DNA from: Lepidodermella squamata
Lineage: Eukaryota > Animalia > Gastrotricha
Length of the DNA stretch: 64,000 nucleotides
Direction: 5' to 3'
Assembly: GCA_047495785.1 (NCBI GenBank)
Contig: JBLDXI010000064.1
Coordinates: 124,001 to 188,000, forward strand
The notes beneath the pieces were generated by a model. It saw only the letters and a program-made list of their open reading frames with translations. It was not told the DNA's origin and searched no databases. Each line of letters starts with the position of its first letter. The first letter of the stretch is position 1. Positions 2,818 through 63,269 of this stretch are shown here, one piece after another. Made by a program: the position numbers and the translations under genes.

Positions 2818-4587
2818 TATAGTAGATCGAAAAAAGCTTTTAATTCAACTAAAATCAAGAATATTACGTGTTCCGACTTGAGAAAATACAACCACTAAAA
2901 ATCGTCACTTCAGTTCAGTTCAAATTCAGTTCAATTGGACAATTTTATTGTCCACATCAATAATTATCGAAAAGGCGAGCATCAAATAATCGCGTGTCTA
3001 TTCATCCATAGCGTTTCGGCAATACAATAATCTGAAACATTGTCTTTTTAAAATATTTTCTCAGTTCTCTTCAAAACGGTTCCTGATGATGACCTGATTA
3101 GCGCAAAAATCGTCTTGTGAGAATAAGGTCATTTCCATAAATATCCCATTCCACTCGAAATAAAAGGCTAAAACAGAATTGCGAATCTGTCATGAGGCTC
3201 ATTCGATCGAAGAAATTTCGCAGCATGAAGTTAGACCAAGAAATAACTGCGTGATCGGAGGGAAGGAAATAGGCTTTTCGCCGAAAGGGGGATGCCCTTC
3301 AAAATTGGCCTATTTCTCTGGCGATGCTTTTCTAGTCGATTCACTCCAGTGCGAGATGTAGGATCCTCGAACTAGGAGGTATTTTCGGGACCAAATGTTA
3401 TAACCTAAAACCTAAGGGTTCCCCTTTAGAAGCAACACCGCGAGCGAAGTGGGCTACAGCTGCCCCGTTGACTGAGCTGCCGCTGAAAGTGATTCGAATT
3501 AAAAAATCGTGGTTGAATTTTGGATCTTAACATTTTGGATAACCCCACACAAACTCCCGTCAAGGCTAGAGGATTCCCAACATTTGAAGCAGTGTTGTTA
3601 CTAGAGATTTTTTGGTACATACCTAGCTCGACGATTGACAGATTTGTCCTTCATTGGTGACAATGGCATGAAATTTGAACCAATAATCGAAGCGAGGGAA
3701 TTTTTCGGATTTACCTCCAGATTCTCTTGATATAATGACGATACAACGAGCTTTCCCTGACGTGACTAAGACATGACATCAACTATGACCTTGGTTGTTA
3801 CTCGTTACTCTAGGTCCGATTGGTTGTTGTAGCATGATTAACATGCGTTTGAAGTCTGTCCCTTCTCACGTAAGGATTTACCAACCAAGATCATATAGCA
3901 TGTAGATTCAATTGGAATCAATTGGAAGAGCGAAGTAGGACGGCCGAACTGGTTGGCATAAGGAAAATCGGCCTAAGGGCCCCCCTTTGGTCTTCCGTCT
4001 TCCACTTAGTTCACCTTGCGGACCGATTGAGGTAGTAGGGATGATCCCTGCCATCCCTAGCGGTACCTCGCTCTCTGCTCTACCGATGCGACCATTCACA
4101 TAGCGCGGATCGCGAAAAATGCGACTTTACCAATACTTATTTGTCTTGTTCATGCTTTATAAGTGCAGCTACGCGAAAAGTTGCTGTGCATCTTGGATCC
4201 CGATCTGGGATGCTTACAGATTACAGCAGGCTTGATTCAGGCCCTATGCCCAGTTGTGTACAAGTAGAACTATCATTATTGTTCTCATCAGTTTCAAAGG
4301 TTCCCCCAGCGCTACTGCGGCAGCTTTGCTGCTGCCGTTGCCAATATCGTTAACGTCGCTGAATAACTTGGATTAAAGCTGGCTTACATCCCTTTCCAGG
4401 TGATGCGAGAAAGCGGCTTTTGCAACGAGACTGAAGAGGCGAAAATGAAAGAAATTTAACAAAGGAATGACATTATTTTGCAAGTCTGGTTTATTCTAAT
4501 ATTATTCTGATGCAGCAGCTCTCAACACTAAACACATCTTCTGCATGTAGTAAACTTTCAACAGCCTATTCAGAGATGACTTATCAT

Positions 4588-17494: not shown

Positions 17495-20302
17495 TCATTC
17501 AACGTAGGTTTCGCAAAATCCGTACTTAGCAGTAACAGCGCAAGAAGTTGGAACCAAACGTAATACCGATGCTAGACTATTATAGATTATACAATTGTTA
17601 TTATTAGGTTCAGCATAAAACAGAGCTGGATCGTATGTGAAAGCCGACCCGTCCGACCACTTAAGGACTCCTCCGGACTCATCTGCAGCAAGACCAACCC
17701 AGCCATTAATGGAGTAGCTTGCAATCACAGCTAGGTCGGCAGCCGTTTTAACAGTTGCCAAGATGCCATCCAGTTGCGAGCACTTTGCGGCTGCAGCCGA
17801 ATGATTCAAAGTACCGCTGGGGTTATTAACATAAAACACTGTCTTTCGCGCGTTTTGACACTGCGATTCGCCACTGAACGTGACATTTGCAGGGAAGCGT
17901 CTCTCAGTGTTGGCGTCACAGCCGCTCGAGCTCAGTCGGCAGGTTACTGAACCATCAGCAGTTCGCAGGCATCGATGGTAAGAGATCTACAAACATAAAT
18001 CAATCATGTTTAGCGTTGATCGCGAACTAATTAGCGATAATATGTTACTAAAATGATTCACGCAAAATAGCAGCGTTGATTACTACCAAATACCAAACCC
18101 TGAAATATTTAAGGAAATAAACTCACAGGAGGCGATATATCATTGATGCATCTGTCGTGATTCAGGTGGAAGGTCCCCAAGTCAGAGAACAGCTTAACCT
18201 GTTATAGAAAAACTGTTGATTCCGGAAAAAGACGTGCTTTTGGTTGAGCATTACCTGAGTTTGATCTTGGAGGCAAGCGGCGTAGCAAGACGTTCGGTTG
18301 GATGAATCCTTGCACGAAACGGCATTCTGTTCAAAATATTAATGTGATTACCAAAAAGATAATTCTTTAGATCAAAACTTACTCCAAGCAGGCAGCTGTC
18401 TTTATTGATGTACACTCTGGTCGAGTACTGCCGAGTTTCGTTGCTTGCGAAGCAGCCGGAGCTTTGCAGTCGGCAGTCGTTGAACCTTTCGGTCGCAGAA
18501 TCGAAGCACCGAATGTGCGGCTTTTCGCTATCCGGAACAGTGACTATCATAAACAAAAATTTTAGCAGTTTTTTATCCGAATTCTTTAGTTTTTAGTTCA
18601 AGCACTAGGAACAAATTTGGAATTAACAAACATCCAGGAAATTAGGATTGGCTTTATGTCTCCACCAAGACAAAATTAATCCTACCTTCACTTCGGAAAA
18701 TCGATATTACAGATGAATTAAAGAGGCAAAATGGTTATAGGGTTTTTTAAATCGCGCCTAGGGCCCAGCTTCATCCTTGAATAAGAAAATCACGAACCTG
18801 CTCCATTTGTACAAGCTGCGAGATTTGGATAGATCGTCGATTCAGTTACCTGTTGGCAAGAAATGATAATAAGTTGGTCAGTCCTAAGTTCATGTCTATA
18901 TTCTTGAAGCCCATGACTTCCCCTTTCCGACAATTTATTAATTTCTAAATTTCGCTGGTTACGTAACATTCATGACGCTAAAATCGATCGATTTAGCTAA
19001 TGTTTGATCAGCTGCTGGCAACCACCTGTTACGTACCCCCAACAAATCCCTTAATTATGAGAGTTCCTTGTTACTAGATGATCATTTCCTGTAATTTGCT
19101 ACTCGAAATAGAAAACTGCGAAAATATTAGGGTTTTCGCAGCGTGAAATCGAAATTTCAAATCGCTAACCCAATTCTGCGGACATAAGTACGAGTTCGGA
19201 ACACAGCTCATAGTGGCATTGTTTGAGGTGCATCGTTTGAATTGCAGGTTCTGAATAAATAGATAATAGACAAGGCTGTAACAGATGGGAAACCATCTCT
19301 CCATACTGTGTCACGTGACCACATTTTAAACAAACGAACACCCAATTCGACCATAATAATTTTATATAATTCCAAAATCAACAACAAAAAAGGGTCACAT
19401 ATGGTTCAATCATTTCCATTTCCTGCTAAATCTGATTTTTTTTAATTTGGAAAAATCAGTTTATCCATGTTGAAAATTTTCTCTATTGTACGATATACAA
19501 TTTGTCTGCTAAATAACATTGATTTTTAGATTGATTTTTATTTTTAGATTGATTAGATTGATTTCGGCCGAGCAAATTGACTTCGAATTATCTCACTGAG
19601 TTGCTTTGTTTAGAGAAAAACAAAAAATAGTTAAGGTCAGGAAAAATTCACTATGGAGAGATGGTTATTTTCCTCTCTGTTACTGTGTTTTCTATGTAAT
19701 TCATATAGAACTTAATAGAACATCACGTTTATAGAGTTTCTCCAATATTAACCTCAAATACGGCTTTGTACTTCTCGCATTCGTTGAGGTTGAACCGCAA
19801 GTTCATCACTGGGTTTGACTTGGCGAACCAGAACAACTGAAAATAAATTCAAACCAAAGCTTCATCAATGAGCAAATTGGCACTAAATATTACAGGTAAG
19901 TGACCCGGGTTATTACAACCGATGTTGGCAGGCACGCAAAATGGAGTTAGCTTCTCGTATTTGTAGCACATCCGGGCATTCTGTAATTGAGAGATATAAT
20001 ACTATGAACGGTTAGAGGTTAGATACCAATCTCACCCCACGATTGCACACTCCGGCTCTGCGGAAAACTGGACCGAGCTAGATAATGAGAAATTCCAAGT
20101 CAAAGTGGTCGCGGATTGACAATAAAAATAAACCTACGCGGTATTCCCGTAGTCGATCGCAGCCGTCGGCAGCTGGTACGCAGTTGGTGAATCGGTTGCT
20201 AAACTGCGAGAAGCACCGAACCCAGTTTAGCGGCTTCCCCGAAGCAATGTCGCATGACGCCAGCACGAGTGCTAGCATTAGAGCACAGTGATACGAAACC
20301 AT
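17495..20302 (-). CDS. Copy C: Cys-module/C-type lectin paralog, 10 exons, apparently intact
   Basis: Exon 1 MVSYHCALML...REYR; exons at ~20077, 19980, 19837, 19250, 18849, 18544, 18328, 18198; terminal exon ~17987-17495. The only copy with an EPN motif (YAEPNNNNC). Confidence 0.86.
19265..19696. mobile_element. Degenerate MITE of the CATAG-ended MULE family (intron 4 of copy C)
   Basis: Inverted ends aaccatctctccata / tatggagagatggtt...ctatg; interior resembles 30130-30340. Confidence 0.55.
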
Positions 20303-24949: not shown

Positions 24950-27810
24950 CTAACCAAGAAAGGTAGGAAGAGGACCAAGAGGAAGCCGGCTATTAAGCAG
25001 TACGAAGGGTGAACGGGGTGGGGGCTGAGGCGACAGGCGGACGCTCTCGAGGTCCTCGCGCAGAGGCAGGACAAACTGGGCAGCATTGGTAGCATATCGC
25101 CGTTGGCACTGCGCAAAGAAGGCCGCCACACCTGGAACACGGCAGCGGCTTTCCAGCTCGGAGACACTAACGCGATCGTCGCGGCGGACGCTGAGGATCG
25201 CCCGAAGACAGTCATTCTGGAGGACAGAGAGCCGCCGCAGCTGCTGCTTCGACGCGGTGGAGAGGCAGATGTTGCCGAACGACCAGATCGAACGGATCAG
25301 CGTGAGGTACAACATCCGCCGCCAATGACGAGAAAGACCAGGGGCGTGCAGGGCACGCCGGAAAAAACCCATGTTCTCGTGGCAGCGAGAGACTACGTGA
25401 TCGATATGAGCTTTCCAGGTGAGCTTGGGGTCCAAACGTACGCCGAGCACGCGCATCGAGGAAACTTGCGGAATGCGCGAACCGTTGAGACGGAGATCTA
25501 GCGGAGCCTGGCCGAAAGGCATGGCCTCGCTTTTCGCAGGGTTGAAGTGCTGGCGCCACTTTGACGCCCATGACGAGATACGGATAAGTTCAAGCTGCGT
25601 ACAGCGTTGCGCCGCGTTGAAAGACCGCCCTTCGCCCACGACGGTAAGATCGTCGGCGTAAGCCTGAAGCAGGGCACCATCGACACTGGGCGCCGAGAGA
25701 AGGTCGGCAGTGTACAGAATATACAAAAGCGGAGAGAGCGGGGAACCCTGTGGGACACCGCAGTTAACCGTGACCTGTCGACTGAGGGATCCGGCGACAC
25801 GGGCCTGGAGGCGGCGATCGCGTAAGTAGTCGGCCATCCAGCCAACAAGGTTTCGCGGCAGCGGCAGCAGGGAGAGCTTGTGGATCAGACCCGCATGCCA
25901 CACAGAATCATATGCGGCCTGCACGTCGAGCCCAGCGAGGACAGTCTTCCGGCGACGAGACCGACTGTGAAAGACACGGTGAACAATCTTAAGGGGCACG
26001 TCGGGGGCTGAACGATGGGAGCGAAACGCATACTGCTCTTCCGGCAACAGATGACGATCATCGAGGAAAGTCGTCGTCCAGCGGGCGACGACGGCCTCAA
26101 GCAGCTTCGCATCAGTGGGAAGCAGAGAGATGGGGCGCTGAGATGAGACCAAGTCACGGGGCTTTCCGGCCTTAGGGATGGGGACGACGATGGCTTCTTT
26201 CCAGGCAGCAGGCACGTAGCGACTGCAAAGAGACATATTGTACAGGCGGCGAAGATGCGACTGCAGCACAGAACCTCCCCACTGGATGAAAATGTTCTGC
26301 ACACCGTCCGCCCCCGGGGCCTTGAAGGGTCGAAGACGACCGACAGCGTCAGCGAGCAGCCGTTGACTGACACTGAATTCTCCAGGGCCAGGCAGACGAA
26401 TCGTAGCGGAGCAGTGTAGATTGCTGTCGGCAGTGGAGTCAGCCTCCAACTGATGCCACCAATGGCGTGTGGCAGCGTCAGCAGCGGGATCGGAGTATGG
26501 GGACATCGGTCGCACAAAGTGGTCGAGCAGCGCGTCGGCGAGGGCCGTCGAAGGTGGCAAGAGCCGCCCATCGTCGAGCTTCATGTAGGCGATAGACTGA
26601 GGCTGGTGACGTTTGTCGAGGCGACGCAGGCGAGCATACGCCTCGCGGTAACGAGCTGAGCAGACAGGGCTTCCACGTAGCGCAGGTTTGAGACATCACG
26701 CCGCAGTTGATGAGCAGCCTTGGCAGCACGAAATTCAGCGTCAACTACCCGCAGCCGCTCGCGGAGGACAGGATCCACGTGACCGCCAAGTGCTCGTTCG
26801 AGGACTCGTTTCTTCTTCAGACAGAAACGCATCTCCGCAGACATGGCGATTTTCTTTAGCTGGGACTTATCGGCGAGAGGAACGTGTTGGCGACGAGCTT
26901 CGACGATTGCGGCGTTGATGGCGGCGCGATAGACAGCGATGAGACTAGTAGGCTCGCCAACAGCAGGAAGCGGGATTGCGCCAAGCAGACGGCGAAGAGT
27001 GCGGAAGTAGCCGAAACGATCAGCGCGCGAAACATCAAAGCGAGGCGCCGGATCCGTGAGCTCGAAAAGGCGGGACGGGCCGCCAACCGGCGCCACGTTC
27101 AGTGTGATTGACGTGCAGAAATGGTCACTGGTGAGACGGTCGCCAACAGAGACACCGCCGGCGAGGAGTCGCAGAGCGGAATCATTGAGAATCCAAATGT
27201 CGAGCGTCGACAGCGAGCCAGTTGCAATGTGCAGATGAGTGGGCTTCGGCGACCGGAGCACAGACAGACCAAGGCGGTTAGCGAGTTGCTGCACGGAAAA
27301 ACCATTGGAATTCCATAGATCACGACCCCACAAAGGCGACTTAGCATTCAGATAGCCACTGAAGAAACACGGCATACCGGCCGCAGTGGCCTCGGTAAAC
27401 TCGGACTCTAAGAAGCGAAGGTCCAGGGAGGACGACGGAGGGCAGTAACCAGTGACAAACCGCACCACAGGGCCGTGGGGTGACGGAACGAGATCCAAGC
27501 GAAGCCATTCGCTGAGCTTGCTGCCGGTCAGAGCCAGCCGCCGCTCGGCGACCACGAGAGCGCCCTCCTGAACTAGAATTGCCGAACCACCACGAGCACC
27601 ACTGAGCAGGAGGTCCTCTGGATCCTGTTCGCGATCACACCTAAACACTGCATATTTGCTAAAGACAACACTGGAGAGAGAGTAAAGAAAAGTTTCATTG
27701 AGAAAAAAAGCAAGAGGATTATAGGTGTCTAGTTGCAAGTTAAGTTCAAAGTCCTTATCATTGATACCGCGAGGGTTCCACTGGACGACGACGTGGGACG
27801 TACTAGCCAT
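24950..27810 (-). pseudogene. LINE ORF2 (apurinic-like endonuclease + reverse transcriptase), frameshifted near 26600
   Basis: Endonuclease: VVQWNPRGI, NET, GYLNA (canonical GDxN altered), TSDH. RT: KAPGADG, RPISLL, Q.AFR, GVPQGSPLSP, YADD. Confidence 0.88.
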
Positions 27811-29118
27811 TGGACGACGTGGTGGCTGGGGCGAGCGAGCAGAGCTTGACAAAAATGCGGTCGACAGCGTGTTCAACCAAGGAGAGACGATGAACAAACG
27901 ACTCGTCGAACCGCTGAAGACGATCCTCCATATACCCGAAGAGTCAAGCACCATCCGGAGACAAAAATTGATGACGCAAAGCAGGGGCAGCAGGCGGGAG
28001 CTGGAGCGTGGGAGGCGTCCCGGGTTGGCGGGTGGGCCGCGGGCCAGCAAATTCGCGAGTATTCAACAGATGCGTCGGTCCACCCTGGAGATGGGGCGGT
28101 TTCACGTGGCGTCGTTGCTCACGCTCAGCAACTTTCACTTCCTTGGCTTCACTGACGGCGCGACGGCGGGCGGTCTCCTTAGCCTGGGCTGCCTTGAAAA
28201 CAGGGCACCCGCGCCAGGCGCCTGAGTGGCGGGGCTCACCGCCGTCGGGACAGTTGGGGCAGTAGCGATCCTCATGTTCAACTTGACAGTCCGCAGTAAC
28301 ATGGTCCTCCGAGGCGCAGCGACTACAGCAGACATCACGGTCGGAACAGTCAATAGCGACGTGGCCGTAACAGGAGCAGCGCTGACACTTCAACGGTAGA
28401 ATCTTGTCCTTCAGTTTGTAGACCTTAACTCGGCGGCTAATAAACTTCATACCGTTCTCCAGAGCATCTTCACACTGCTCACGCGTGACGAAAACGATAA
28501 CGCGCGGAGGTGACTTTGACTCGGACTTCGGGGGCAGATCGCGTATTTCTTCAACGTACGACGACGGTAGGAGCTGACGCAGATCATCGGCGGAGTAAAA
28601 GCCTGGCAGGCGATACGAGATAACACTGCGCTTGTCGCGGGCGATATGAGGGGACACGGGCTGCCGAGGATCGGACTCGCCCGGACGGTGAATACGAAAC
28701 TCGGACTTGGCGAAAGCATCGGCAGGAAAGCCATCCCTTTTAAGCAAACGGTCAGCGTCAGTCGCAGTCGCACACTTTACACGGAGACCGCCACTCTTCT
28801 CATGACGTCGACGGCAACGGGCGCAAGCCAATCCGCAACTCGGGCGAGGTCAGGCTCAAGCTGGCGACGATTCATAGTCGTGATGTTATCGATGATAACG
28901 ACGCGGTATTTGTTAGGGCTGGGAGCGGCGCCTGGCGGACCACCGAAGTCAGGCTGGCCAGACGGCGGCACAGCGGAGCGAGCCGTACGCGCGGCCCGGA
29001 TGGTGACGAGGAGCTGCATGACCGCCTCGAGTTCGTCGAGAGCGAGATCGGCAACGTTCAACTTCTTAGCTCGTTCCTCTTGAGTTATCCCAAACGGCCG
29101 CTTCTGTGGCAAGGCCAT
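27803..29118 (-). pseudogene. LINE ORF1 (gag-like, three zinc knuckles), with frameshift and premature stop
   Basis: CQRCSCYGHVAIDC, CSRCASEDHVTADC, CPNC..H...C. Frameshift near 28830; an in-frame TGA at 27944-27946 is followed by more open frame to a TAG overlapping the ORF2 start (AATGGCTAG). Confidence 0.8.
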
Positions 29119-32995: not shown

Positions 32996-34043
32996 TATCA
33001 TCAGTACGATCAACGCTAAAAAAGCCGAACGTACTACCTCATTCGTCATTATGGTTATCATGCATGGTTATTATGAAAAGCACAGACGTTTCGCTTTCGT
33101 CAAGAGTCGAGATTTGAAATTCAAGCAATATTTAAATTATTTTCGAATGGGAATTAGGGAGTCTCAAACAGTGACTTGTGTTATTTAATTTATTTAATTT
33201 AACGCTTCAATCAGCGACCTTCTTGAATCGATCATAGTCAATTATTGTCCCATTTGTCATGTTTCGTGTTCTATTTCAATTTTCTTTTTCCCCAAAATAA
33301 TACGATTGTTTATCGCGAAGTAGGTCTGTCGGTTTATGTTATTCGCTAAAAATCGGGTATATTTCGCAATTCGGCGCCCCTAATGACCTCGGTACCGGGC
33401 TAACCGGGCTTGGAATACAGGCTCACTGGTAAGCCTCGCAGGCTTACCAGTTCTAAACACGTAACGTGATTTTTTACGCAAATCCGGATAACGGGAGGTT
33501 CGAAGCCGCTGCGTCCTGGTACGTCTCATGAATTAAGGCGCTATGTTATCGTGTTTTTCAGTCACGGTCCCTGTGAGCGAGAAGCCGCATATCCGATGTT
33601 TCGACTCGACAACTGGCAAATTCAACGGCTGCCGACCACGAAGCACTGGCTGCTTGGCTAACAATGAAACTCAGCAATATTCGACTAATGTGTTCATCAA
33701 CTTTCAAAGCTGCCTACTCGGAGTAAGTCTTTTCTAATTTACTTGTATTTGAGGCCTAAGTTTGTATTTTAACAGAACGCGGTTTCATGCAAAGATTCGT
33801 CTAACCGAAGTTCATGCTACGCAGCCTGCCCTCGAGACCTATCACAGGTGAAACTTGTTATTAAAACTCAGGAATAAATTTTCCCATGGGCATGATTCTA
33901 AAACAGGTTAAGCTCTTCTCGGACTCGCAATCTTTTCAACTGAACCACGGCAAGTGCAACGATGAGATAACGCCCAAGGTGAGCTCGCATTAACTCGAAA
34001 TCCCAAATTTCGCTAGCTTGTCGCAAGTTCAACTGAAATTACA

Positions 34044-40014: not shown

Positions 40015-43000
40015 TCATTCAGCATAGGTTTCGCAGATTCCACTGCTTTTAGTTTTGTTGCAAGGATAGAAATGCATCAGACCAAAAGCCTGAATGACAC
40101 TCCCACATTTAGAAACATCTGGCGTAATATCTGGCATAAACAGTTCTCCAATGAATGTGAAAGTGGAACCGTCCGACCACTTAAGAGCGCCGGCGTCTGG
40201 AGCAAGACCGACCCATCCAGAGGATGATTGTGGCATAAAGTCGACAATCCACTGCAGTTCACCCTCCGTTTTAACAATTACTAACATGCCATCCTGTTCC
40301 GAGCATAATGTGGCTGCAGCTGAATAAGTTAGACCCTGCAGAGGCTCAACCACAAACAGAGTCTTTCGAGCGTTTTGGCATTGCAATTCACCGCTGAACG
40401 AAACATTTGCAGGGAAGCGTCTCTCAGTGATGGCGTCACAGCCGCTCAAGCTTGGTCGGCAGGTTACTGAGCCGTCAGCAGTTCGCAAGCATCGATGGTA
40501 AGTGGTCTATAACAGATATAAAAGTATTATCAATTAAACATCGTAATTGATTATTAATTACGATGTATTCACCAATAATAGCTTTACACGGATTTTATTG
40601 TAATTCGAACTAGTTTAGGCCGTAAATATGCGTTTTTTCCAATAAATACAACATTAACTTCTCCTCTGAGGCAAATTTTTGCCTCGCTTTTTTTGAATAA
40701 CTTTTCAACCATAAATGAAGTAGTTTTCAGCATATTAAAGTGCAGATGTGGTCTGATAACTCCCTAAACGCTTGTTTGAAACAGATGTACCTTCAAGAAG
40801 TTAAGCAAGAAATGCGCTTTGCCATTTTACACAATTTTTCCATTTTTGAAAAATGATGGTCCGTGATGGATCCAAGTCACCCATGCTAGAAAAGAAATTG
40901 CAAAACTATCCGAAACTCAAGGTTTCATAAAATTGGCACAGATCAATCAAAAATTCCGCAAAATCATTTTCCGATCGCGGTTGGTGAATGAGCCCTTTTC
41001 TGTGGCTGCTAAGGCGAATTTCCCTGTTGACGGCGCGTTACTGACCCAATTCCCAGGTAAGAAAATTTTCCAATGAAGCCTATTCACAGGATGATTCCAT
41101 TCAGCCTCAAATCCTGTAAAATGCCATTTTTCAAAAAGTCGCGGACAGCATTTTCCTCATCAATTTTATCTCCCGAACTTCATTCTAACGGTGGAAAGTT
41201 GTGGAAAGTTCACCCCAGATTAGATCTATCGACTGGCGAAAACCGCATTGAAAAATTCCTCATGGTTACGAAGTTATTCAAAAAACGCGAGGCAAAAAAA
41301 GTTTGCGCATACTTTACTAGGCAGGGCAACATAGAATTGTAAACCTTAAGTATTACCCAACAACAGAATTTCACCCCTAATTTTATACATTGCGTATCCT
41401 ATTTTGGTAAGCGAAATAGCGATGCTACGTACGAAATTGGTTTACTGCTCATTCCATCAGAGAACCTGAAATTTGAAAAATTGTGTGAGATGAATCCGGG
41501 ATATTTTTTAAATGATGAAAGACTAGCCTTGTGAAGTAACGTAAAAAATCCATTCATTACTATCATTACCAAAGAAGTGGAATACGATGACGAAGAAGAC
41601 GCAAAAAAATAATGACCATCATTCTTGTCAACAAGTTCATGCTAAAAATAGATCGGCAAACACTAATGGTGCCGTGGCAAATTGCTCCGGGAAAAGGTGT
41701 ATAAAAATAAAATTGCCATCGATAATAAAAATTTAACTTGAAAGCAAATTAGCTGATCCTTTCGGGAACACGTCGTTTTCTCCAGTTCGAGATCTTTAAA
41801 ACACCCCCCAAAAATTTCAGAAAGTGGTTACCAACTAGGAAACTAAAAACTACAAGTTTCCTTTGAATCCTCCAACCTTTAATTCATTTAAGCCCACTTT
41901 GAGCTTGGAAATGCCCAAAAAGCGTAAGAAGCGAGTCGATCGAATCGGCCCCATAATTTTCTGTACCCGAGGGTATAACCGTATCACCTTCCAACAAAAT
42001 CCTGGTTTGTATACCCCCCACTTTCCACCAGTCAAGTCAAATTTCTCAAGCTCGTGTGATCTGCCAGTTGGTAGAAGTTGATCGATCGCGAAAACATGTT
42101 AAAAGCCGGTAAAATTAATGGAAGAAAGCTTCTGCTTCTTTCAAACTATGTCTGATGGGCGAAACGCGAAACATTTTAAATTCTCAGTTCCGCGAAGCCG
42201 CGTTGCGTACACGAATTTACGATTTACGCAAACCTGAAATCTTGAAAGAGATAAACTCACAGGAGGCGATATATCCTGGATGCATTTGTCGTGATTCAGC
42301 TGGAAGGTGCCCATATCCGAGAACAGCTTAACCTGTTATAGAAAAACTGTAAATAACGGGGAAAACCGGGCCTTTGTCTGAGCGTTACCTGAGTTTGATC
42401 TTGGGGACAAGCTGCGTAGCAAGACGTTCGGTTGGTTGAATCCTTGCACGAAACGGCATTCTGTCAAACAAGCGTAACTGTTAGGATGCAAAAGCTATTT
42501 GAGATCTCACTCCTAGTAGACAAGATGCGCGGTTGATGTAGACTTTGCTGGAATATTGCTGAGTTTCATTGTTAGCAAGGCAGCCAGAGCTTTGAGGTCG
42601 GCAGTCGGTAAATTTGCTTGTTGTCGAATCGAAACAGCGGATGTGTGGCTGTTCGGTGATCGGAACAGAGACTGCGATTAAAAAACACAACTTGTGTTAT
42701 TTTTTTATTTCCCCGTTGCGAAATTCCTCAGCCCATTTTTTATGTCCCAATAATTGATCAAATTTTGTAATGCAGGAATGACACCCGGAATTTTCATTCA
42801 ATCATTGATAAATTTGTTTTGAACGAAATACCTGAATTCACCAACCATTAAATTTGTCGAAAAATCAAGGTCCCTTATTCCTTATTTAGATTGAGGATTT
42901 ATCATAGCCATTTCAAATAACCGATTTAAATATTTGACTCACCCGAGGCGTTGATGCACGACATTAAATCTGGGTAAATCGTCGATTCCGTGATCTAGAA

Positions 43001-47045: not shown

Positions 47046-47290
47046 GAGCCACACATCCGTGGCTTCGACTTGACAACTGGCAAATTCAACGGCAGAAGCT
47101 CTGGCTGCCCCAAAATGAAACTCAACAACACTCGACTAATGCGATCATCAACTATGAACATTGCATGCTTGGAGTAAGTGTTATCAGCAATTTAATGGCC
47201 GTTGATGCCCAATTTTATATTTTAACAAAACGCAAAGAGTCGTCTAACCAAGTTCATGATACGCAGCCCGCCTCGAGATCTCTCGCAGTT
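47046..47290 (+). pseudogene. Degenerate exon 7-8 fragment of the lectin family
   Basis: gagccacacatccgtggcttcgacttgacaactggcaaattcaacggc ... cttgga|gtaag, with deletions relative to D and G. Confidence 0.7.
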
Positions 47291-53570: not shown

Positions 53571-56500
53571 ATGGTTTCGTATCACTTGGCTCTGCTGCTA
53601 ACCCTATTGCTGGCGTCAAGTGACCCGGTTTCGAGTAAAGAATTGAACTGGGTCCGCTGCTTCTCACAGGTCAGCAACCGATTCACCAACTGCGGACCAG
53701 CCGCCGATGGCTGTAATCCACTCACCGAATACCAGGTTTGCAAGGATTTACTTTTATGCAGTAACCTGATGATTGTTGAATTTTTCACCAACTAGTGGGG
53801 CGGCATTTTTCGAACAACTGGCGTCTGCAACACTGGGGTTAGTTCTATTCTTCTGTTTATTCTTGTTAATTAATTCCTCTGTTTTGCCGATAGAATGCCC
53901 GAATGTGTTACAAATACGAGGCTCTTACTCCGTTTTGTGTACCTGGTAACATTGGCTGTAACAACCCGGGTGATATGAATGTAAGTCTCGTTTCATTTTC
54001 TGAAGTCTCAAAAATGAAAATAGTCTCTAGATATTTCTCTGCTTTTCTCACATCTGTCTTCAAAGGGGCAATGAAAAGACGAAAATTGAACATAATTCTT
54101 TTGATCCCTAGCAAATTTCAAGATGAGGTTCCGAGAATTCTGAATAATGACCAGCATTAAATTCTGATCTGTAAATTGGTTGTAATTCGTTGAACCAACC
54201 ATAGATAAATAAGTGAGAAAAGACAGGAAAGTCATGCATGAGCATTGTACCGAAATGGTTGAACGCTCGTCCATTTTCGTTTTATCAAAATGTTGGCACT
54301 TTTTCAAGCCTCACTTCTCACTCGTATTGCATAGCCCACCTGGCATACGCTGCGCAAGGCTTCAGTCTTAATGGTCGGGCATCTTACCCAGATTCCGTAC
54401 TTTTTCGAATTTTATTCATAGCGTCGAAATTTGCTGCTCAGCCGCATGGAAGCGTTGTTGAAAAAATCTAAAAAATTGTTTAACTTTGGAATTTTTTAGC
54501 CAAAATGGTAAGTCGTATTTTGGCGTTTCCTTTTGGCTATAGGTACATCTACCTATGCCTATAATACCAGCCAAAAGAGCAACTTTGGCTTATGCAAGTG
54601 AGACGAGCGATAGAGTGGAATTGGAAGTGTGTTTGAGCCAAGTCTGAAACTTTTACAGGATGTAGACGAAGGTGTGATAGCATCATGGGCCGTCGTGCGG
54701 CGGAAAATTCGACTTACCATTTTGGCCAAAAAATTCTTAAGTTGGTAAATTTGTTTATAGAAATTTTTTATAGACAATCCCGCGCGGCTGAGCAACAAAT
54801 TTCGACGCTATGAATAAAATTCAAAAAAGTACGGTATCTGGGCAAGATGCCCTTGAATATAGACTGAGGTCTCGTGCAGCGTTCGCCAGGTGGGCTGTGC
54901 AATACGAGTGAGAAGTGAGGCTTGAAAAAGTGCCAAAATTTTGATTAAACGAAAATGGACGAGCGTTCAACCATTGGTCACAGCTGACGCCGAATTTCGG
55001 AACAATGCTCATGCATGAGTTTCCTATCTTTTCTCACTTATTTATCTATGGAACCAACAAAATCTCATTCTTTTTTCTATTTTATTTTTTTATTGTTTTA
55101 ATATTTGCCGCAGACGTTCTGGTTCAACGATCAGAATGCGACGTTGAGCTTGAAATACAACCTCAACGAATGTGAGAAACAGAAAGCTGCATTCGGGGTA
55201 AGAATTCGGGAAACTTGGTCATTACGCATTGTTCTTTATAATATTGTATCATTCCAGACTTTGAAATTCCGGCGCTGTACGTCGAACAACGTAATCAAGA
55301 CGTGTGTGCCAGATCCTTATTCCTGCCCCGACAACTGGGTGCGTCCTTTCCGCAATCATGGGCGCGGTAGTTGTTGATTCTCGGTTTCGTTTCGTCTACA
55401 GGTTACTGGATCACTTTTGTATCCCGATCTCGCGTCTTGCATCAGTGGAACAGGTTTGTGAAATTGATTTATTTTATCGGAGTTAAGTGACATGAGATAA
55501 TATAAATATAATTTAAAAAAATATTTTTTTTACTGTGAGAGAGGAAACCATGGCTTATAGGGGGTTATTCGAGGGAGTTATTATTGGAGATAATATTATT
55601 CGAAGAAAATCGGTATTACAAAAGTTTGAAATATTAGCCAGTGAGATTTCCTGATTACCAATGAAGGCAGTGCACCGGAAAGGATCATCTAGTTAGGGCT
55701 ATTGTGTGCTCATACTTTTTCAAATCAAAAGCGGAATTTCCAGTTATTTCTCCTAGACTGTACTTCCTCATTCGTCATTACGCTAGGTTCCTTAAAGTAC
55801 GATCGAATGAGTCAGCAATCTGGTTGCTTTGGCGCGTCGCTATCGATATGCATAGTTATTTTGAAAAGCACAGACATTTCTTTTTCGTCAAAAGTCGAGA
55901 TTTAAAATGTAAGCAATATTTAAATTATTTTTGACTGGGAATTAGGATGTCTCAAACAGTGAATTTTATTTATTTAATTTACCGCTTGAATCAGGGACCT
56001 TCTTTAATCGATCATCGTCAATTATTGTCCCATTTCTCATGTTTCGTGTTCTATTTCAATTGTCTTTTTCCCTAAAATAACACGATTGTTTATCGCCAAG
56101 TAGTTCTGTCGGTTTATATTATTCGCTAAAAATCGGTTTTATTTCGGCGCCCTTAATAACCTCGGTACCGGGCTAACCGGGCTTAGAAAAAATATAAGCC
56201 TTCACAGGCTTACCAGTTCTAAACACGTGATTTTTTACGCAAACCCGGATAACGGGAGCTTCGAAGCCCCTGCGTCCTGGTACGTCTCATGGATTAAGGC
56301 GCTTTGTTTTCGTCTTCTTCAGTCACGGTCCCTGTGCATACAAGTCCGGGTTTTGCAGAGTGACCTAGATGATTCATGTGCAATTATTATTGCTATATAT
56401 CATGTGTGTAGTAGTCTTATGTTTAGCTATGCGCGCTGGTGGTGCGGTGGTGAGGTCGTGCAGTCGTTCACTTGTTATTTTTATCAGTCGTAAAGCCATT

Positions 56501-59500
56501 CGTTTTTCGAGCTATTTGCGAAATTCATCTGAATAAAATGAGTGAAACTGCGAAATCGCGATCACGCAATCGGCGAAAAAGGCAGCGCAGGAGTGAGCGC
56601 AGAGCTGCTCATCATCAGCAACAACAGCACAATCGCTTTGAAAAACAGGCCGATATTCGATCAATGTTCGCCAAATCGAAAAATAATCAGCAGTCTGAAA
56701 CCGGTTTATCGGAAAATGAAGGCGATGAATCGTTTCTTCATGAGGAATTTGGACAGCAGGAACAAGCAGGCGCGCATCAAGCCGAGCAAATCGAGCCCAT
56801 CGAAATCAGCGATACAACGCTCGACTCTTCGGTTTCTACGGCAAGTTATGGCTCTTGGAACTACATCAGGGCGGTGTCAAAGCGGTTTGACAAAGGTTAG
56901 TATCTGGAAATGCTTGACACTGAGAGTCCTAAATAGTCCGAATTTATATAGTTCATGCCGCGAATTCACGCGTTGAGTGGACCTTTAGCGACCGGAATCG
57001 ATTGCGACATGTGTTCGCCTTCTACACGAAACGCGGTAAATTGGCGACTGCTCCCAAAAGCTTATTAAAATTCTGGATGCGGATTACTCTGTCCGATAAA
57101 AACCTTGATGCTGAACTTGGGAGAAGCCAAAACGCAATCTGCCGGCAAATTTCGAAACTCGATGAGCTCTGCCGAGCCGGGCTTTTTTCTTTCGTCTGGT
57201 CCGCACAAGATAAATATGAATTGCATTTCGATCGAGCTCGAGATGAGTATGTGTACACGAAAAGATGATATTTTGCCGTGTTATCTGATGATGATGAGTT
57301 CAAGAGTAGAGGCTGAATAAAAAACATTCTTTCTACATTTTCGAATTTTACTTTTAAAAATTAAAACTTGAAATGAGAAGTAAAGCTGACAAAATTGAAG
57401 TATCAAATTTTCAGATTGTCTTTCATGTTCTGAATTCTCATGAGCTGAGAAGACAACGGCCAGAAATTAGAAGTTTGACTGCTAACTGTTGCGCGCAGCT
57501 CTTTGATGAGTAGTTCGATGCTTTCAGCGGACAAAGCGGCCAGATTAATATTTCGTTTCAACAGCTCGTATGTGTGGCTCGAAAGGAGATGTGCGTATGA
57601 CGTGACAGGACCAACATGCGTCTTCCAGAGCGATGCATAACGCGGCATGAAGAACTTGCCCTTTCCTTTTTTCCGATTTTCCTTGATATCGTCAAACGCG
57701 GCACATGATGCGATGCAAAGCTTCCGAAGACCGGCTAAAGAAGTAAGAAAGTCGTTTTCTTTGATTCGGGCAGATGACTTCACTTTTCCGAAAACTTTCT
57801 TTCTCTGCCAATTTTTTGGCAAGAAAAACGCATCAGTCAACGAATTTTGGCTCATATGTTCAGTAAATCGCTTGAATGCCTGAAATTTTAAATCCAAAAT
57901 TAAGTTTTATTTTCACTCTACCACAATTCTACCTGAACAACGCCGTAGTGATTCGAATTTTTAATGCTGACTTTGACTTTCCCCTTCAAAGTTCGGCGGA
58001 CGTCAATAGACAGCTTCGAGTTTTTCGGAGTTCGCTTGATCCGTCTTGAAGAAGCCGCTGATGATTTGTATTTCGACCCAATCTTCAAGAATTCGATGAC
58101 TTTTTTTATTGCTTCGCGTTGACTGAACGCTCTCAACTTTCCGAGAACCTAAAGTTATTTTTCGGATGAAATGTCTTTTCGAAGAGTTTTCCGCTTGCTA
58201 TGCTAACCTGGGTAATCAGTGGTTTCGCAATATTGACTTGAAGATGGAAGAAGTCCGGTATTATCAGCAATTTGTCCTCGCTTAGCCGAATCATAGGCCC
58301 GAAATCTTCCGACCACCCCAGCTTCCCAGCCATTTCGGCCGAATATTCATCGAACTTGCGTCTTTTAGCTGGCAAAGTTGGGTTTCGGACGCTCATCTCG
58401 CAAATAACACAACGATTTTCACTCGACTGATGACCACAGCCAAATATTTTTACCAGCGCCGGGTAATCACAGCAGGTCAGCAGTCTGAAACTGTAGCTTT
58501 TTCCGTCGACTGTTATGCCTTGCTCGACCAGTTTTACAAGCTCGTCGACAGGGGGTTGTAAATATTCTCGAAAATTTCTCGCTGACTCGTTATCATTATA
58601 GACAGCCAATTGGTCTTCATTATCGATCCCGGCTTTCCTTTTCCTGCTCGCCACACAGACATAGGCGGTGACAAGGGGGTCAGCGTAATTCGTCCGGCTC
58701 GCCATCCCATCCACCTTAAACAGTTACTTATAAAGTTTCAATTCTACCTCGAATTTTAATTTATTTATACCTGGAGTCGAATGTCGTTAGTGACCGACGG
58801 TTTCAACTCACCTTTACGGGCCCAAGTACTGGCAAGCGAAAATACCGATCGGAAAGCCGCCTTTCCGTCGCTTATCGTGCTTATAGGGTGCAAAACAGCC
58901 AGCTCGTTCCTAACTTTATAGAATAAATCTTTTGACACTGACTCGAAACCAATGGAACGACGCATTGCTAGCAACTTGCTGGCGTTAATTCCGTAACGCA
59001 ATCCCAGAATCACGAGACTAGTGTAAAAAATATTTAATAAAATTCGATAACTTGACAATTTCTATAACCTTTTAGCACGATTGTTTGCGCTTTCCCTAGA
59101 TTTAGCTGGCTTTTCGCTGGGTACTTCGATTTCCACAACCCCAATGTCATCATACTCGATGGTTAATTTGGCCGATTTCATAATGGCCCCATTCATTATC
59201 TGCGAAAATGGCCATGTAGAAGGTAGCGTCTTCAAAGCAAGTGTCTGCGCCAATTCAGCTCGCGCTCTACGAGTACGAACCTGCACATCAGTAATCGAAG
59301 CTGGCATCCGCTCCAAACGGTGCTTTATCGAGTCCAAGTCAACGCTCACCTCAAAACTGTAAGCAGCGGGCATTTTACAAAACGAAAACACACAGTTTAC
59401 CCATTTTATATCATATATATCGTATTCCTGTCGTCGCAACTGCTTTTTGTGTCACATCAGGGGTAATTAGAAGGCGCGACTTGCGTTGTTTTGATTATAA

Positions 59501-60967
59501 AAGCCCATTATCATTTGCGATAGCTCAGGTCAGTATGAATGTGGGGCGGACTTTTATGGTACACATACGGCAAGGCGCGATTATTATTGTGCATAAATGG
59601 GGTAAATCATTTGACAACAGTGAGGCAAGAGTACAAAAAAATACCATCTCGCCACCTCACGACCGCACCACCAGTGGCACATTATATAAACGATAAAAAC
59701 ACACGTGATGAATAAAATGGACTTTGACCCTGCAAAGCCGGACTACAATGATAACCTCGGTACCGGGCTAACCGGGCTTAGAAAAAATATAAGCCTTCAC
59801 AGGCTTACCAGTTCTAAACACGTGATTTTTTACGCAAACCCGGATAACGGGAGCTTCGAAGCCCCTGCGTCCTGGTACGTCTCATGGATTAAGGCGCTTT
59901 GTTTTCGTCTTCTTCAGTCACGGTCCCTGTGAGCGAGAAGCCGCACATCCGCTGTTTCGACTCGACAACTGGCAAATTCAACGGCTGCCGGCCACAAAGC
60001 ACTGGCTGCTTGGCTAACAATGAGACTCAGCAATATTCGACTAATGTGTTCATCAACTATCAAAGCTGCCTACTCGGAGTAAGTCTTTTCTAATTTACTC
60101 GCATTTGATGCCTAAGCTTGTATATGAACAGAACGCGGTTTCATGCAAAGATTCGTCGAACCGAAGTTCATGCTACGCAGCCTGCCCTCGAGACCTAACG
60201 CAGGTGAAACTTGGCTATTGAAAGATCAAAGTTTCTATGAGTGATTCTAAAACAGGTTAAGCTCTTCTCGGATTCGCAATCTTTTCAGCTGAACCACGGC
60301 AAGTGCATCGATGAAATATCGCCCACGGTGAGTTCGAGCATCCTACTTCGCGAACTGGCGTGGCGTGAGGAAGCACTGCATTATCACCTGACTTTATTAC
60401 TATCATTTTAAAAAATCGAGAGAACATACAATTTTACTTTCTGTCCTGTGACATTTTTAGCCGGCTGCGTATTTCCGTTGCGTTGACAACAGCGATGGCG
60501 CCGTTCACTGCGTCACCGAGTCGACAGGATGCAATGCTGCATCTCAGCTTCGAATTCCGGCTAATGTGGTCTATCCGGACGAGATCACGTGCAAGAACGC
60601 GACCAAGAAGTACACGGCGGTGGGTTATGCGGGTCCCAGAGCCAACAGCACGGCTAAATGCGTCGATGTCAATGCTACGTTGGCGACGATTAGGTCTGAC
60701 GCGGAGCTGGTTGCTGCTAAACAAGCGCTGACGGCGAGGGGGGCTGTTAGCGGTTGGATCGCTCTCACTCGCCAAAACGGTGAATTCAGATGGGATGATG
60801 GATCCAGTTTCACTTACGTCGATACGCAATGGAATGCTGGTGATGGCGACTGCGTTAAACTTGTATTTATAAATGCCAATGGAAGTGATGTCCAAGTCGG
60901 TGATTACTACTATGAGCTCAGTGGTTGTGAGAGCTATACACGCAGTGTCTTATGCGAGTCGTTTTAA
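53571..60967 (+). CDS. Copy G: Cys-module/C-type lectin paralog; complete ORF if the downstream exon-7 acceptor (59918) is used
   Basis: Exons at 53571, ~53796, 53894, 55114, 55258, 55401, 59918, 60132, 60256, and 60461-60967; a decoy duplicate acceptor lies at 56323. Confidence 0.75.
54200..55050. mobile_element. Foldback/MULE-type element with ~300-bp TIRs and 8-bp TSD
   Basis: catagataaataagtgagaaaaga / tcttttctcacttatttatctatg; TSD GAACCAAC at 54192-54199 and 55051-55058. Confidence 0.85.
56156..56336 (+). repeat. 181-bp direct repeat, left copy (intron 6 end + first 14 nt of exon 7)
   Basis: Identical by eye to 59751-59931; single-copy in paralog D (~33383-33575). Confidence 0.92.
56538..57268 (+). 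CDS. Transposon accessory protein, 2 exons, ~224 aa: basic NLS-like N-terminus, acidic region, Myb/SANT-like C-terminal domain
   Basis: Exons 56538-56895 and 56952-57268 (56-nt GT-AG intron, phase 1). EWTFSDRNRLRHVF...ELGRSQNAICRQISKL resembles Myb/SANT helices 1 and 3. AATAAA at ~57316. Confidence 0.62.
57403..59373 (-). CDS. RAG1-core/Transib-like DDE transposase, 5 exons, ~583 aa, intact
   Basis: Exons 59373-59069, 59017-58771, 58714-58208, 58148-57933, 57879-57403 (introns 51-59 nt, GT-AG, no stops). Motifs VDGM, DYPALVKIFG-x9-CVIC, DFFH, TSYAHLLSSHTYELLKR...ESIE. Confidence 0.85.
59751..59931 (+). repeat. 181-bp direct repeat, right copy (restores the exon 7 acceptor)
   Basis: Continues seamlessly into the rest of exon 7 (VSEKPHIRCF...). 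Confidence 0.92.
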
Positions 60968-62507: not shown

Positions 62508-62575
62508 AAGTGAATTTGCTTGCTGTCGAATCGAAACATCGGATGTGCGGCTGCTCGGTGATCGGAACAGTAACT
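62508..62575 (-). pseudogene. Exon 7 fragment of a further lectin paralog, cut by the foldback element
   Basis: cgcag|..TVPITEQPHIRCFDSTASKFT, nearly identical to copy E exon 7. Confidence 0.7.
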
Positions 62576-63269
62576 GCGAGTTGCAAAGTTGCGAGTTGCA
62601 AAATGCGAGTTGTGTATAAAGTGCTCCCTCGTTTGTAGACCACGATGATTACGACGATTTCGATGTTGAATCGAGCGAAATTACATGTTCTAGACGCTAC
62701 CATCCAGATGGTGAAGAAATTTTAAAGATACTTACGACGACCTCTGGAATGATACCAATAAGCGAAGCGCGACAAAAGAAACTCGCCACTACAGTGCTCC
62801 CTCGATTAGTGCACGGGGTCGGGGCTGTGGGTCTTGCACTTATCCAGGGTTGCAGCTAACGAGGGCTGTTAAAGAGCTAGTGATGAATCATAAGTGCGTA
62901 ACTACGTTTTTTTCTTAGTTGCTAAGGAGACGTTGTTTTTAGTGGTTAGCCATATCTGAAACCAAGCCCGGGATCAATTTTTAAGGATCCGTATTTTTTT
63001 TCTTAAAAGTATCTGTTGCCAGTAATGGATTGAAAATGATCGTTGGTCCACTGGGGTCATTCGGATTATGTTTCGGATCAATGGCCTTTGGCCTTTTGTA
63101 GCAATCATGGTAATTAGGTTGCTTTTCTCATGATTTAATCAATACCAAAATAATTTTTTAAATCGGGCTGGTAGTTATTACCATGTCAACATTTAAAGCA
63201 GAATGAGGATTTTGGGGTCAATCAAAAAAGGGCAAAATTTTTCCTTTCAATACTCATTTCGTAAAACAG

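What the first reader, a model, noticed from the sequence alone, without database searches (positions are those of the whole stretch)
56337..59750. Intact RAG1-core-like transposon with a convergent Myb/SANT-like partner gene instead of RAG2
Seen: a 3414-bp TIR element with two tail-to-tail spliced genes, both with open frames. Against vertebrate RAG1 as I recall it, the 583-aa protein aligns without gaps at key blocks: VDGM vs CDGM (D600); DYPALVKIFGCGHQSSENRCVIC vs [23 protein letters not shown] (D708, C727/C730); DFFH vs DALH (H795); VTSYAHLLSSHTYELLKRNINLAALSAESIELLIKELR vs [38 protein letters not shown] (H937/H942, E962); also VRNELAVLHP vs LRNAEKVLLP. Known: Transib elements carry one gene, ProtoRAG/RAG-like elements carry convergent RAG1L and kelch RAG2L, and a Myb/SANT partner is the hallmark of PIF/Harbinger. 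Inference: this is a RAG1/Transib-family element that independently recruited a Myb-like co-factor in the RAG2 position, an architecture I do not recognise. It lacks an N-terminal RING region.
Basis: partly seen in the sequence, partly recalled or inferred. Interest (0 to 1): 0.9.

Follow-up and report, generated by a model that had tools for sequence, protein, structure and literature searches.

The report
Intact two-gene CMCT (RAG1-fold) transposon
This is an intact, recently inserted cut-and-paste transposon; its transposase belongs to the broad enzyme clade that also produced RAG1, and it carries a conserved second gene for a small probable DNA-binding partner, so it is a rare undescribed lineage but not demonstrably a RAG1/Transib element, and the partner is not shown to be Myb-like.

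Summary
Window 56337-59750 is a 3414-bp TIR element with two convergent, spliced, open genes: a 583-aa transposase on the minus strand and a 224-aa protein on the plus strand.

The transposase has D186/D267/E544, C(2)C, H341 and H(4)H. These motifs are the published hallmark of the whole CMCT clade (EnSpm/CACTA, Mirage, Chapaev, Transib, RAG1), not of RAG1 alone.

- **Fold:** a model of a family member matches only RAG1, Transib and RAGL among solved structures. It matches predicted Transposase_21 (EnSpm) models equally well.
- **Sequence profiles:** HMMs find only a sub-threshold Transposase_21 match and no RAG1.
- **Ends:** a relative has a 3-bp TSD, and the termini are CAT..ATG. Transib has a 5-bp TSD and a CAC heptamer-like end.

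The second gene is an integral part of the element. Two 40%-identical relatives carry its homologue in the same convergent position, and an RNA-type run shows its intron spliced out. No HMM supports a Myb/SANT identity; it looks like an HTH.

This copy is flanked by a perfect 181-bp target duplication. The same scan noted that duplication separately on this same stretch of DNA (s1-374287).

Verdict: a new two-gene lineage or variant inside a known clade. Interest is moderate.

The parts
56156..56336 (.). Left copy of the 181-bp target duplication (host intron end plus exon start)
   Evidence: 100% identical to 59751-59931. The paralogous empty site at 33320-33644 holds a single copy.
56337..56365 (+). 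Left terminal inverted repeat (5'-CATACAAGTCCGG...)
   Evidence: An X1 contig joins this exact base to a different flank.
56436..56456 (.). Left subterminal G/T-rich repeat, inverted copy of 59654-59674; candidate binding site for the partner protein (inferred)
   Evidence: pair I2: 21 nt, 95% complementary.
56538..56895 (+). Gene 2 exon 1: basic NLS-like N-terminus followed by an acidic, Ser/Gln-rich region
   Evidence: Covered by RNA-type run X2.
56952..57268 (+). Gene 2 exon 2 (includes the stop codon): conserved HTH-like domain of about 100 aa
   Evidence: The 56896-56951 intron is spliced out in X2. Homologues in L004 and L007.
57403..57879 (-). Transposase exon 5 (includes the stop codon): H522, H527 (H(4)H), E544 and the C-terminal tail
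   Evidence: Feature search returns RAG1_ZnH2.
57933..58148 (-). Transposase exon 4: poorly conserved basic linker
58208..58714 (-). Transposase exon 3: D186, D267, C286/C289 (C(2)C) and H341
58771..59017 (-). Transposase exon 2: region before the RNase H fold
   Evidence: This region is contiguous with the exon-3 equivalent in P0002, P0004 and P0016.
59069..59373 (-). Transposase exon 1: N-terminal region, conserved in L004 and L007
59654..59674 (.). Right subterminal G/T-rich repeat
   Evidence: pair I2.
59722..59750 (-). Right terminal inverted repeat (...CCGGACTACAATG-3')
   Evidence: An X1 contig ends exactly at 59750.
59751..59931 (.). Right copy of the 181-bp target duplication

Best explanation
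This is an autonomous cut-and-paste DNA transposon of the CMCT clade (EnSpm/CACTA-Mirage-Chapaev-Transib/RAG1). It belongs to a rare, so far unnamed lineage that leans towards the CMC side. The 583-aa transposase uses a DDE triad (D186, D267, E544) on an RNase H fold. A RAG1-type zinc module (C286, C289, H522, H527, plus H341) supports that fold. The enzyme acts on imperfect TIRs of about 30-45 bp that end 5'-CAT...ATG-3'. Normal insertions of the family make a 3-bp target duplication. The convergent second gene encodes a 224-aa accessory protein with a basic NLS-like N-terminus, an acidic/Ser-rich linker and a conserved HTH-like domain of about 100 aa. I infer that this protein binds the element's G/T-rich subterminal repeats, and that it helps to recruit, assemble or regulate the transposase. 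That would make it work like TnpA of En/Spm or the Myb-like protein of PIF/Harbinger, without being shown to be homologous to either. Shown here: element boundaries, gene structures, catalytic motifs and their conservation, fold class, conservation of the two-gene layout, splicing of gene 2, several insertion sites, and a very recent insertion. Inferred: the chemistry (hairpin-type excision, as in Transib/RAG), the DNA-binding role and targets of the partner, and present-day activity.
For: Boundaries, TIRs and the empty site. Open spliced CDSs. Family conservation of DG..RT, CCDYxAL..GCGH....RCxIC, PDxFH and YAHLLxxH...SAE. Residue positions. The definition of the CMCT clade (DDE, 2C + 3H, CA..TG termini, 2-5 bp TSD) comes from PMC12730594. 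Pfam Transposase_21 is the only match (E=1.4e-4, 21.6 bits). A distant sister family shows the same weak match and is linked to this family by hhalign at 95% probability, E=2.6e-8. Foldseek against the PDB returns RAG1, Transib or RAGL for ranks 1-47. The atlas shape search gives TM 0.52-0.61 to RAG1 and Transposase_21 clusters alike. The L004 relative has a homologous TIR and a 3-bp TSD (ATG). L005 holds the same element in another flank. Gene-2 homologues lie convergent to the transposase in L004 (E=5e-8) and L007 (E=3e-10). The gene-2 intron is spliced in RNA-type run X2. Element depth in X1 is about 300-480 against about 107-125 for the flanks, with a different flank at the left end.
Against: Lineage inside CMCT is unresolved, because I could not fetch reference Transib, Chapaev, Mirage or EnSpm sequences and so built no phylogeny. 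The Transposase_21 match is below Pfam's cut-off and is absent for P0016. The 3-bp TSD rests on one complete relative. This copy itself has a 181-bp duplication, not 2-5 bp. The structural model is of a 40%-identical homologue, lacks the E-bearing C-terminal part, and is only moderately confident (pLDDT 64.5). No family assignment for gene 2 was obtained: Pfam and PDB searches were negative and the single-sequence AlphaFold model failed (pLDDT 45). No transposase RNA was seen in X2. Transposition activity and the partner's role are untested.
Confidence: 0.7

Rival explanations
1. One reading: a true Transib/RAG1-like lineage element that recruited a Myb/SANT cofactor in the position RAG2 holds in ProtoRAG.
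For: All top solved-structure matches are RAG1, HzTransib or BbRAGL. The feature search returns RAG1_RNase_H/ZnC2 for exon 3 and RAG1_ZnH2 for exon 5, the latter being the only named family for exon 5. The distance from D267 to C286 is 19 residues, the same as D708 to C727 in RAG1 (for this protein; RAG1 numbering from my own knowledge). The gene layout is convergent as in ProtoRAG. The feature search puts Rap1 Myb first for gene 2, and the W-T-x-x-D-R-x-x-L and G-R-S-x3-I-x2-Q patterns resemble Myb helices 1 and 3.
Against: No CMC structure has been solved, so RAG1 and Transib are the only clade members the PDB search could return. Predicted Transposase_21 models match equally well. There is no RAG1 HMM match and no RAG1 or Transib sequence match. 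The relative's TSD is 3 bp, and the termini are CAT.., not the CAC heptamer-like end. No HMM supports Myb.
Confidence: 0.15
2. Gene 2 is not a transposition cofactor. It would instead be an element-encoded regulator, for example a repressor or copy-number control factor, or a factor aimed at the host.
For: In RNA-type run X2, gene 2 is covered and spliced while the transposase gene has almost no coverage. That pattern fits a constitutively expressed regulator. Its conservation across relatives shows selection at the element level but does not say for what function.
Against: The best-studied small DNA-binding partners of two-gene DNA transposons (En/Spm TnpA, the Harbinger Myb-like protein) are needed for transposition (my own knowledge of those systems). 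Inverted subterminal repeats at both ends fit an assembly role. X2 is a single run, and Logan contigs are a poor measure of expression.
Confidence: 0.12
3. The locus is not a mobile element: it is a domesticated gene pair, or an assembly artefact that produced the flanking duplication.
For: A 181-bp 'TSD' is abnormal for any DDE transposon. Only one copy lies in this window.
Against: X1 shows a different flank at the same left end, and element depth is several-fold above the flanks. The L004 and L005 relatives sit in different flanks with precise TIR boundaries. The paralogous empty site is precise.
Confidence: 0.03

Closest known systems
CMCT clade of DDE transposons as defined by Kojima 2025 (PMC12730594): EnSpm/CACTA, Mirage, Chapaev, Transib, Plavaka, ESTA, Lanisha, plus RAG1
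   Same: [quoted passage not shown]
   Different: Not assignable to any named lineage with the tools used here. Only 7 representatives matched among 1.84 billion proteins. It carries a conserved convergent HTH-like partner gene.
Chapaev (CMC)
   Same: 3-bp TSD (in the relative); C(2)C and H(4)H motifs; compact 2-3.5 kb element; transposase of about 550-600 aa with few exons (PMC4079192).
   Different: Termini are CAT..ATG, not the invariable CAC..GTG. The 'LH' motif reads FH. The one Chapaev element whose coding content I read is described with a transposase only; that Chapaev elements in general carry a single gene is my own knowledge.
En/Spm (CACTA) with TnpD transposase and TnpA DNA-binding protein
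   Same: The only Pfam similarity is to Transposase_21. Both are two-protein systems with a transposase and a small DNA-binding factor, and both have subterminal repeats inside the TIRs. The family TSD is 3 bp.
   Different: No CACTA termini. The partner is a separate convergent gene, not an alternative splice product. No similarity to TnpA was detected. The element is much smaller, and there are no DUF4218 or DUF4216 domains.
Transib / ProtoRAG / RAG1-RAG2
   Same: RAG1-type RNase H + ZnC2 + ZnH2 core by fold and features. Convergent two-gene layout as in ProtoRAG and the vertebrate RAG locus.
   Different: No RAG1 HMM or sequence match. 3-bp rather than 5-bp TSD. No heptamer-like CAC end. 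The partner is a small HTH-like protein, not a kelch/PHD RAG2-like protein.
PIF/Harbinger with Myb/SANT-like partner
   Same: A two-gene DNA transposon whose second protein is small, probably binds DNA and carries an NLS-like stretch; 3-bp TSD.
   Different: The transposase is unrelated: no significant DDE_Tnp_4 match (one distant relative, P0008, scored E=0.078, 13 bits). The partner has no detectable Myb/SANT/MADF HMM match.

Membership tests
CMCT clade (PMC12730594) | Catalytic D, D, E on an RNase H fold | tested here: met
   D186, D267 and E544, conserved in relatives. The model of a family member has an RNase H-type beta-sheet and matches RAG1 and Transib.
CMCT clade (PMC12730594) | [quoted passage not shown] | tested here: met
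   C286/C289, H341 and H522/H527, conserved in the family.
CMCT clade (PMC12730594) | 5'-CA..TG-3' termini | tested here: met
   The window element ends CAT...ATG, and so does the L004 element.
CMCT clade (PMC12730594) | TSD of 2-5 bp | tested here: inconclusive
   The relative L004 has a 3-bp ATG. The window copy has a 181-bp duplication instead.
Transib / RAG1-like | Significant sequence or HMM similarity to RAG1 or Transib transposases | tested here: not met
   No RAG1 Pfam match at E<=1 or E<=10. No RAG1 or Transib chain at E<=10 with the family profile or with exon 5.
Transib / RAG1-like | 5-bp TSD and heptamer-like CAC(A/T)(A/G)TG termini (own knowledge) | tested here: not met
   3-bp TSD in L004. 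Termini are CATACAA / CATTGTA / CATTATA.
Transib / RAG1-like | Phylogenetic placement within the Transib+RAG1 clade | not testable with these tools
   No reference Transib, RAG1, Chapaev, Mirage or EnSpm sequences could be obtained. Fold similarity does not discriminate within CMCT.
Chapaev (PMC4079192) | 3-4 bp TSD | tested here: met
   3 bp in L004, a single case.
Chapaev (PMC4079192) | Invariable 5'-CAC...GTG-3' termini | tested here: not met
   Termini are CAT...ATG in the window, L004, L005 and L006.
EnSpm/CACTA | Pfam Transposase_21 above the gathering score; CACTA termini | tested here: not met
   21.6 bits against a cut-off of 28.6. No match for P0016. Termini are not CACTA.
ProtoRAG | Convergent RAG2-like (kelch) partner gene | tested here: not met
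   The partner is convergent but is a 224-aa protein with no kelch match.
Myb/SANT-like domain (gene 2) | Match to Myb/SANT/MADF/trihelix profiles or structures | tested here: not met
   No Pfam match in 3 homologues at E<=10. The best PDB profile match is a Fis-type HTH at E=0.17. phmmer searches were negative.
Myb/SANT-like domain (gene 2) | Three-helix fold with spaced aromatic residues | tested here: inconclusive
   The AlphaFold single-sequence model failed (pLDDT 45). The feature search puts Rap1 Myb first at 0.87 with 163 shared features, which is only a lead. The W..DR..L and GRS...I..Q patterns are suggestive.
PIF/Harbinger | DDE_Tnp_4 / Harbinger-type transposase | tested here: not met
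   No such match for any exon.

The most novel reading that the evidence does not exclude
This is a previously undescribed, deep lineage of the CMCT clade. In it a RAG1-fold transposase is obligately paired with a convergent small HTH (possibly Myb/trihelix-like) DNA-binding subunit. That would be an independent, third instance of a two-subunit system in this clade, after TnpA/TnpD and RAG1L/RAG2L. It would also be experimentally tractable, because the element looks active.
Probability: 0.35. Interest if true: 0.7.

Novelty: new variant of a known kind. Interest (0 to 1): 0.5.

Why it matters
RAG1 arose from a transposase of this clade, and how such enzymes come to depend on a partner subunit is still debated. 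This is a compact element of about 3.4 kb that appears active. It has a RAG1-fold transposase and a conserved, unrelated partner gene in the same convergent position. That gives a second natural system for asking what a partner contributes: nuclear import, end recognition, synapsis or regulation. It also adds a rare lineage to the CMCT clade, which helps classification. It may be a candidate genetic tool. The 181-bp duplication at this copy is a separate oddity that bears on how such elements integrate or are repaired.

Tried and rejected
(1) Scan of metagenome contigs with a degenerate TIR pattern: 95 loci were returned, but none has transposase, gene-2 or DNA similarity, so all are chance matches.

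(2) The search for homologous proteins with the gene-2 domain: nothing. With the family profile: only 3 fragments.

(3) AlphaFold on the gene-2 domain alone: pLDDT 45, unusable. I did not run a fold search on it.

(4) PDB sequence and profile searches for RAG1 or Transib and for Myb: negative.

(5) Rfam scan of the window: no match.

(6) Earlier-findings look-ups for other copies in this genome: none usable.

(7) Full-length spliced proteins could not be given to the search or structure tools, because they have no contiguous reference and I did not type them. All searches therefore used single exons or homologues. The structural model is of P0016, not of the window protein.

(8) I considered and rejected hAT, Mutator, PIF and piggyBac identities. 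None matches by Pfam, and Foldseek gives no such hits above the generic RNase H matches.

Full report
**1. Anatomy**

The stretch 56337-59750 (3414 bp) is bounded by imperfect terminal inverted repeats. The left end reads CATACAAGTCCGGGTTTTGCAG and the reverse complement of the right end reads CATTGTAGTCCGGCTTTGCAG. Inside the ends lies a 21-nt G/T-rich repeat, inverted between the two ends and 95% complementary (56436-56456 / 59654-59674).

On the minus strand, five exons joined by GT..AG introns of 51-59 nt give an open 1752-nt CDS of 583 aa. The exons are 59373-59069, 59017-58771, 58714-58208, 58148-57933 and 57879-57403.

On the plus strand, two exons (56538-56895 and 56952-57268) give 224 aa. 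The two genes are tail to tail. No other copy lies in the window.

**2. Boundaries and mobility**

The element is flanked by a perfect 181-bp direct duplication: 56156-56336 equals 59751-59931. A paralogous copy of the flanking host sequence at 33320-33644 runs straight through with a single copy of those 181 bp. It therefore serves as an empty site and fixes both junctions to the base.

In public run X1, which holds 90% of the sampled words, one contig joins base 56337 to a different flank. Another contig ends exactly at 59750. Element depth is about 300-480, against about 107-125 for the flanks. The element therefore sits at more than one site in that organism.

A perfect duplication and two open genes point to a very recent insertion.

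**3. The transposase**

Searching exon 3 against 1.84 billion representative proteins gave only 7 hits. All are fragments from metagenomes, so the family is rare.

The family alignment conserves DG..RT, CCDYxAL.K..GCGH....RCxIC and PDxFH. The C-terminal block conserves YAHLLxxH and SAExIE. In the window protein these correspond to D186, D267, E544, C286/C289, H341 and H522/H527.

[quoted passage not shown] He calls this the 'CMCT' clade, and adds 5'-CA..TG-3' termini and TSDs of 2-5 bp. They diagnose the clade, not RAG1/Transib.

**4. RAG1/Transib or CMC?**

Sequence profiles:
- The only Pfam match for any exon is Transposase_21 (EnSpm tnp2), E=1.4e-4 and 21.6 bits, below the 28.6-bit cut-off. 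No RAG1 model matches, even at permissive thresholds.
- A profile of the family, and exon 5 alone, find no RAG1, Transib or RAGL chain in the PDB at E<=10.
- The most distant hit, P0007, belongs to an insect-rich family of uncharacterised proteins with the same weak Transposase_21 and DUF1258 matches. That family is linked to ours by hhalign at 95% probability, E=2.6e-8.

Language-model features:
- Exon 3 sits next to Transposase_21 (0.97), RAG1_RNase_H/ZnC2 (0.96) and Plavaka (0.91) clusters.
- Exon 5 sits next to RAG1_ZnH2 (0.92).

Structure:
- The spliced window protein has no contiguous reference, so I modelled P0016. It is a 294-aa uninterrupted homologue, about 40% identical, covering the equivalents of exons 2-3. 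The model has pLDDT 64.5 and pTM 0.61, with the core at 70-91.
- Foldseek against the PDB returns RAG1, HzTransib or BbRAGL for ranks 1-47 (E from 5e-5). Generic RNase H folds appear only after that.
- No CMC transposase structure has been solved (own knowledge). Against predicted structures the model matches RAG1 clusters (TM 0.55-0.61) and Transposase_21 clusters (0.52-0.61) equally well. It also matches many uncharacterised eukaryotic proteins with better E-values (2e-9).

The fold is RAG1-like, as expected for the whole clade. It does not place the family within the clade.

**5. Relatives, termini and TSD**

Contig L004 (3708 bp) holds a complete relative at 264-3511. Its TIR (CATTATAACTCGGTTTTGCCGAGGGCAAAG..CATCACGTG) is recognisably homologous to the window's right TIR. 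It is flanked by a 3-bp duplication, ATG.

L005 has the same element next to a different flank, and L006 starts exactly at the TIR.

A 3-bp TSD and non-CAC termini fit CMC-type elements better than Transib. Chapaev has 3-4 bp TSDs but invariable CAC..GTG termini (PMC4079192). Transib has a 5-bp TSD (own knowledge). This rests on one complete relative.

**6. The second gene**

tblastn with the window's gene-2 protein finds homologues of its C-terminal domain on the opposite strand, immediately downstream of the transposase. In L007 the match is at 7125-6877 (34% identity, E=3e-10). In L004 it is at 3010-2708 (30% identity, E=5e-8), inside that element's TIRs. The convergent two-gene layout is therefore conserved among members whose transposases are only about 40% identical. 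The gene is an integral part of the element.

In the RNA-type run X2, a contig skips 56 nt with GT..AG ends between 56893 and 56950 (cut +2), which is the predicted intron. Coverage lies on gene 2 and hardly at all on the transposase gene.

The protein has three parts: a basic N-terminus (an RNRRKRQRR-type stretch), an acidic, Ser/Gln-rich middle, and a conserved domain of about 100 aa. That domain carries W-T-x2-D-R-x2-L, APKS..K.W and LG(R/K)(S/T)x3Ix2Q...AGL(F/Y)xF.

Myb/SANT identity is not established:
- No Pfam match in any of the three homologues at E<=10.
- The best PDB profile match is the Fis-type HTH of NtrC-family regulators, at a non-significant E=0.17.
- Single-sequence searches were negative.
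- No homologues were found by the word-indexed protein search.
- The single-sequence AlphaFold model failed.
- Only the feature search puts Myb first (Rap1 Myb, 0.87, 163 shared features), and that tool rates such a hit as a lead only.

I call it an HTH-like, probably DNA-binding domain. A Myb/trihelix type is possible, at roughly even odds.

**7. Mechanism**

The most likely reading is an autonomous two-component cut-and-paste transposon. The DDE/zinc-module transposase cleaves and joins at the CAT..ATG ends. The small partner binds the subterminal G/T-rich repeats and supports import, end recognition, synapsis or regulation. Such repeats are present in inverted orientation at both ends of the window element. 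In L004 they appear as an array of GAGTGTCG-like units.

This is how En/Spm TnpA and the Harbinger Myb-like protein work (own knowledge). The partner's function here is inferred, not shown.

**8. The 181-bp duplication**

The duplication is real and atypical for the family. Three mechanisms are possible:
- an aberrant integration with widely staggered joining, followed by fill-in;
- end-joining capture of an excised element between filled-in staggered breaks;
- unequal exchange between two same-orientation insertions 181 bp apart.

I cannot tell these apart. The scan holds a separate note on this duplication on the same stretch (s1-374287). That note reads it as regenerating the interrupted host exon. 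I confirmed the duplication and the empty site. I also saw that it spans an apparent acceptor (..ttcttcag) and the exon start. I did not test the splicing consequence.

**9. Verdict**

The element, the convergent partner and the RAG1-type core are real. The core is a clade-wide feature, a specific Transib/RAG1 assignment fails the tests I could run, and the Myb label is unproven.

Two-protein systems already exist in this clade (TnpA/TnpD, RAG1L/RAG2L). This is therefore best filed as a new two-gene variant or lineage of a known kind. It is rare in the databases and apparently active. A phylogeny with reference sequences and a transposition assay with and without the partner are the decisive steps.

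Noticed in passing
window 56156-56336 and 59751-59931; empty-site paralogue at 33320-33644: A perfect 181-bp target duplication flanks the element, far longer than the 3-bp TSD seen in a relative. It spans an apparent intron acceptor and exon start of a host gene, so the downstream copy could keep the host exon usable.
   Followed up: partly
window 24950-28831 (minus strand): A GC-rich (52-58%) non-LTR retrotransposon. Its ORFs match RVT_1 (E=1e-30) and Exo_endo_phos_2 (E=4e-9), and an upstream gag-like ORF has CCHC-type cysteines.
   Followed up: partly
window 59913-60000, with similar stretches near 1806-1893, 6565-6652, 18461-18545, 33576-33644, 42589-42674, 47047-47093 and 62511-62576: The host exon next to the insertion belongs to a multi-copy, cysteine-rich family (..RCFDS.TG.F..C....GC..) repeated across the window. 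It has no Pfam match.
   Followed up: no
window 56511/56623, 56827/56987, 57082/57187 and 59555/59654 in run X2: RNA-type contigs fold back on the opposite strand at several places within gene 2 and near the right end. This could be a cDNA artefact, or a sign of antisense or double-stranded RNA from the element.
   Followed up: no
L004 320-395: The relative carries a subterminal array of about eight GAGTGTCG-like units just inside its left TIR. Both of its ends have CACGTG palindromes about 35-45 bp in. These are candidate protein-binding sites.
   Followed up: no
L007 1233-3167 (minus strand): A 644-aa ORF lies upstream of the relative's transposase and has no Pfam match. It is not known whether it is host sequence or part of a larger element.
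   Followed up: no
run X3 (biofilm metagenome), window 58309-58624: Two 151-nt contigs are nearly identical (1-2 differences) to transposase exon 3. The host organism, or the same element, is therefore present in an environmental biofilm sample.
   Followed up: no
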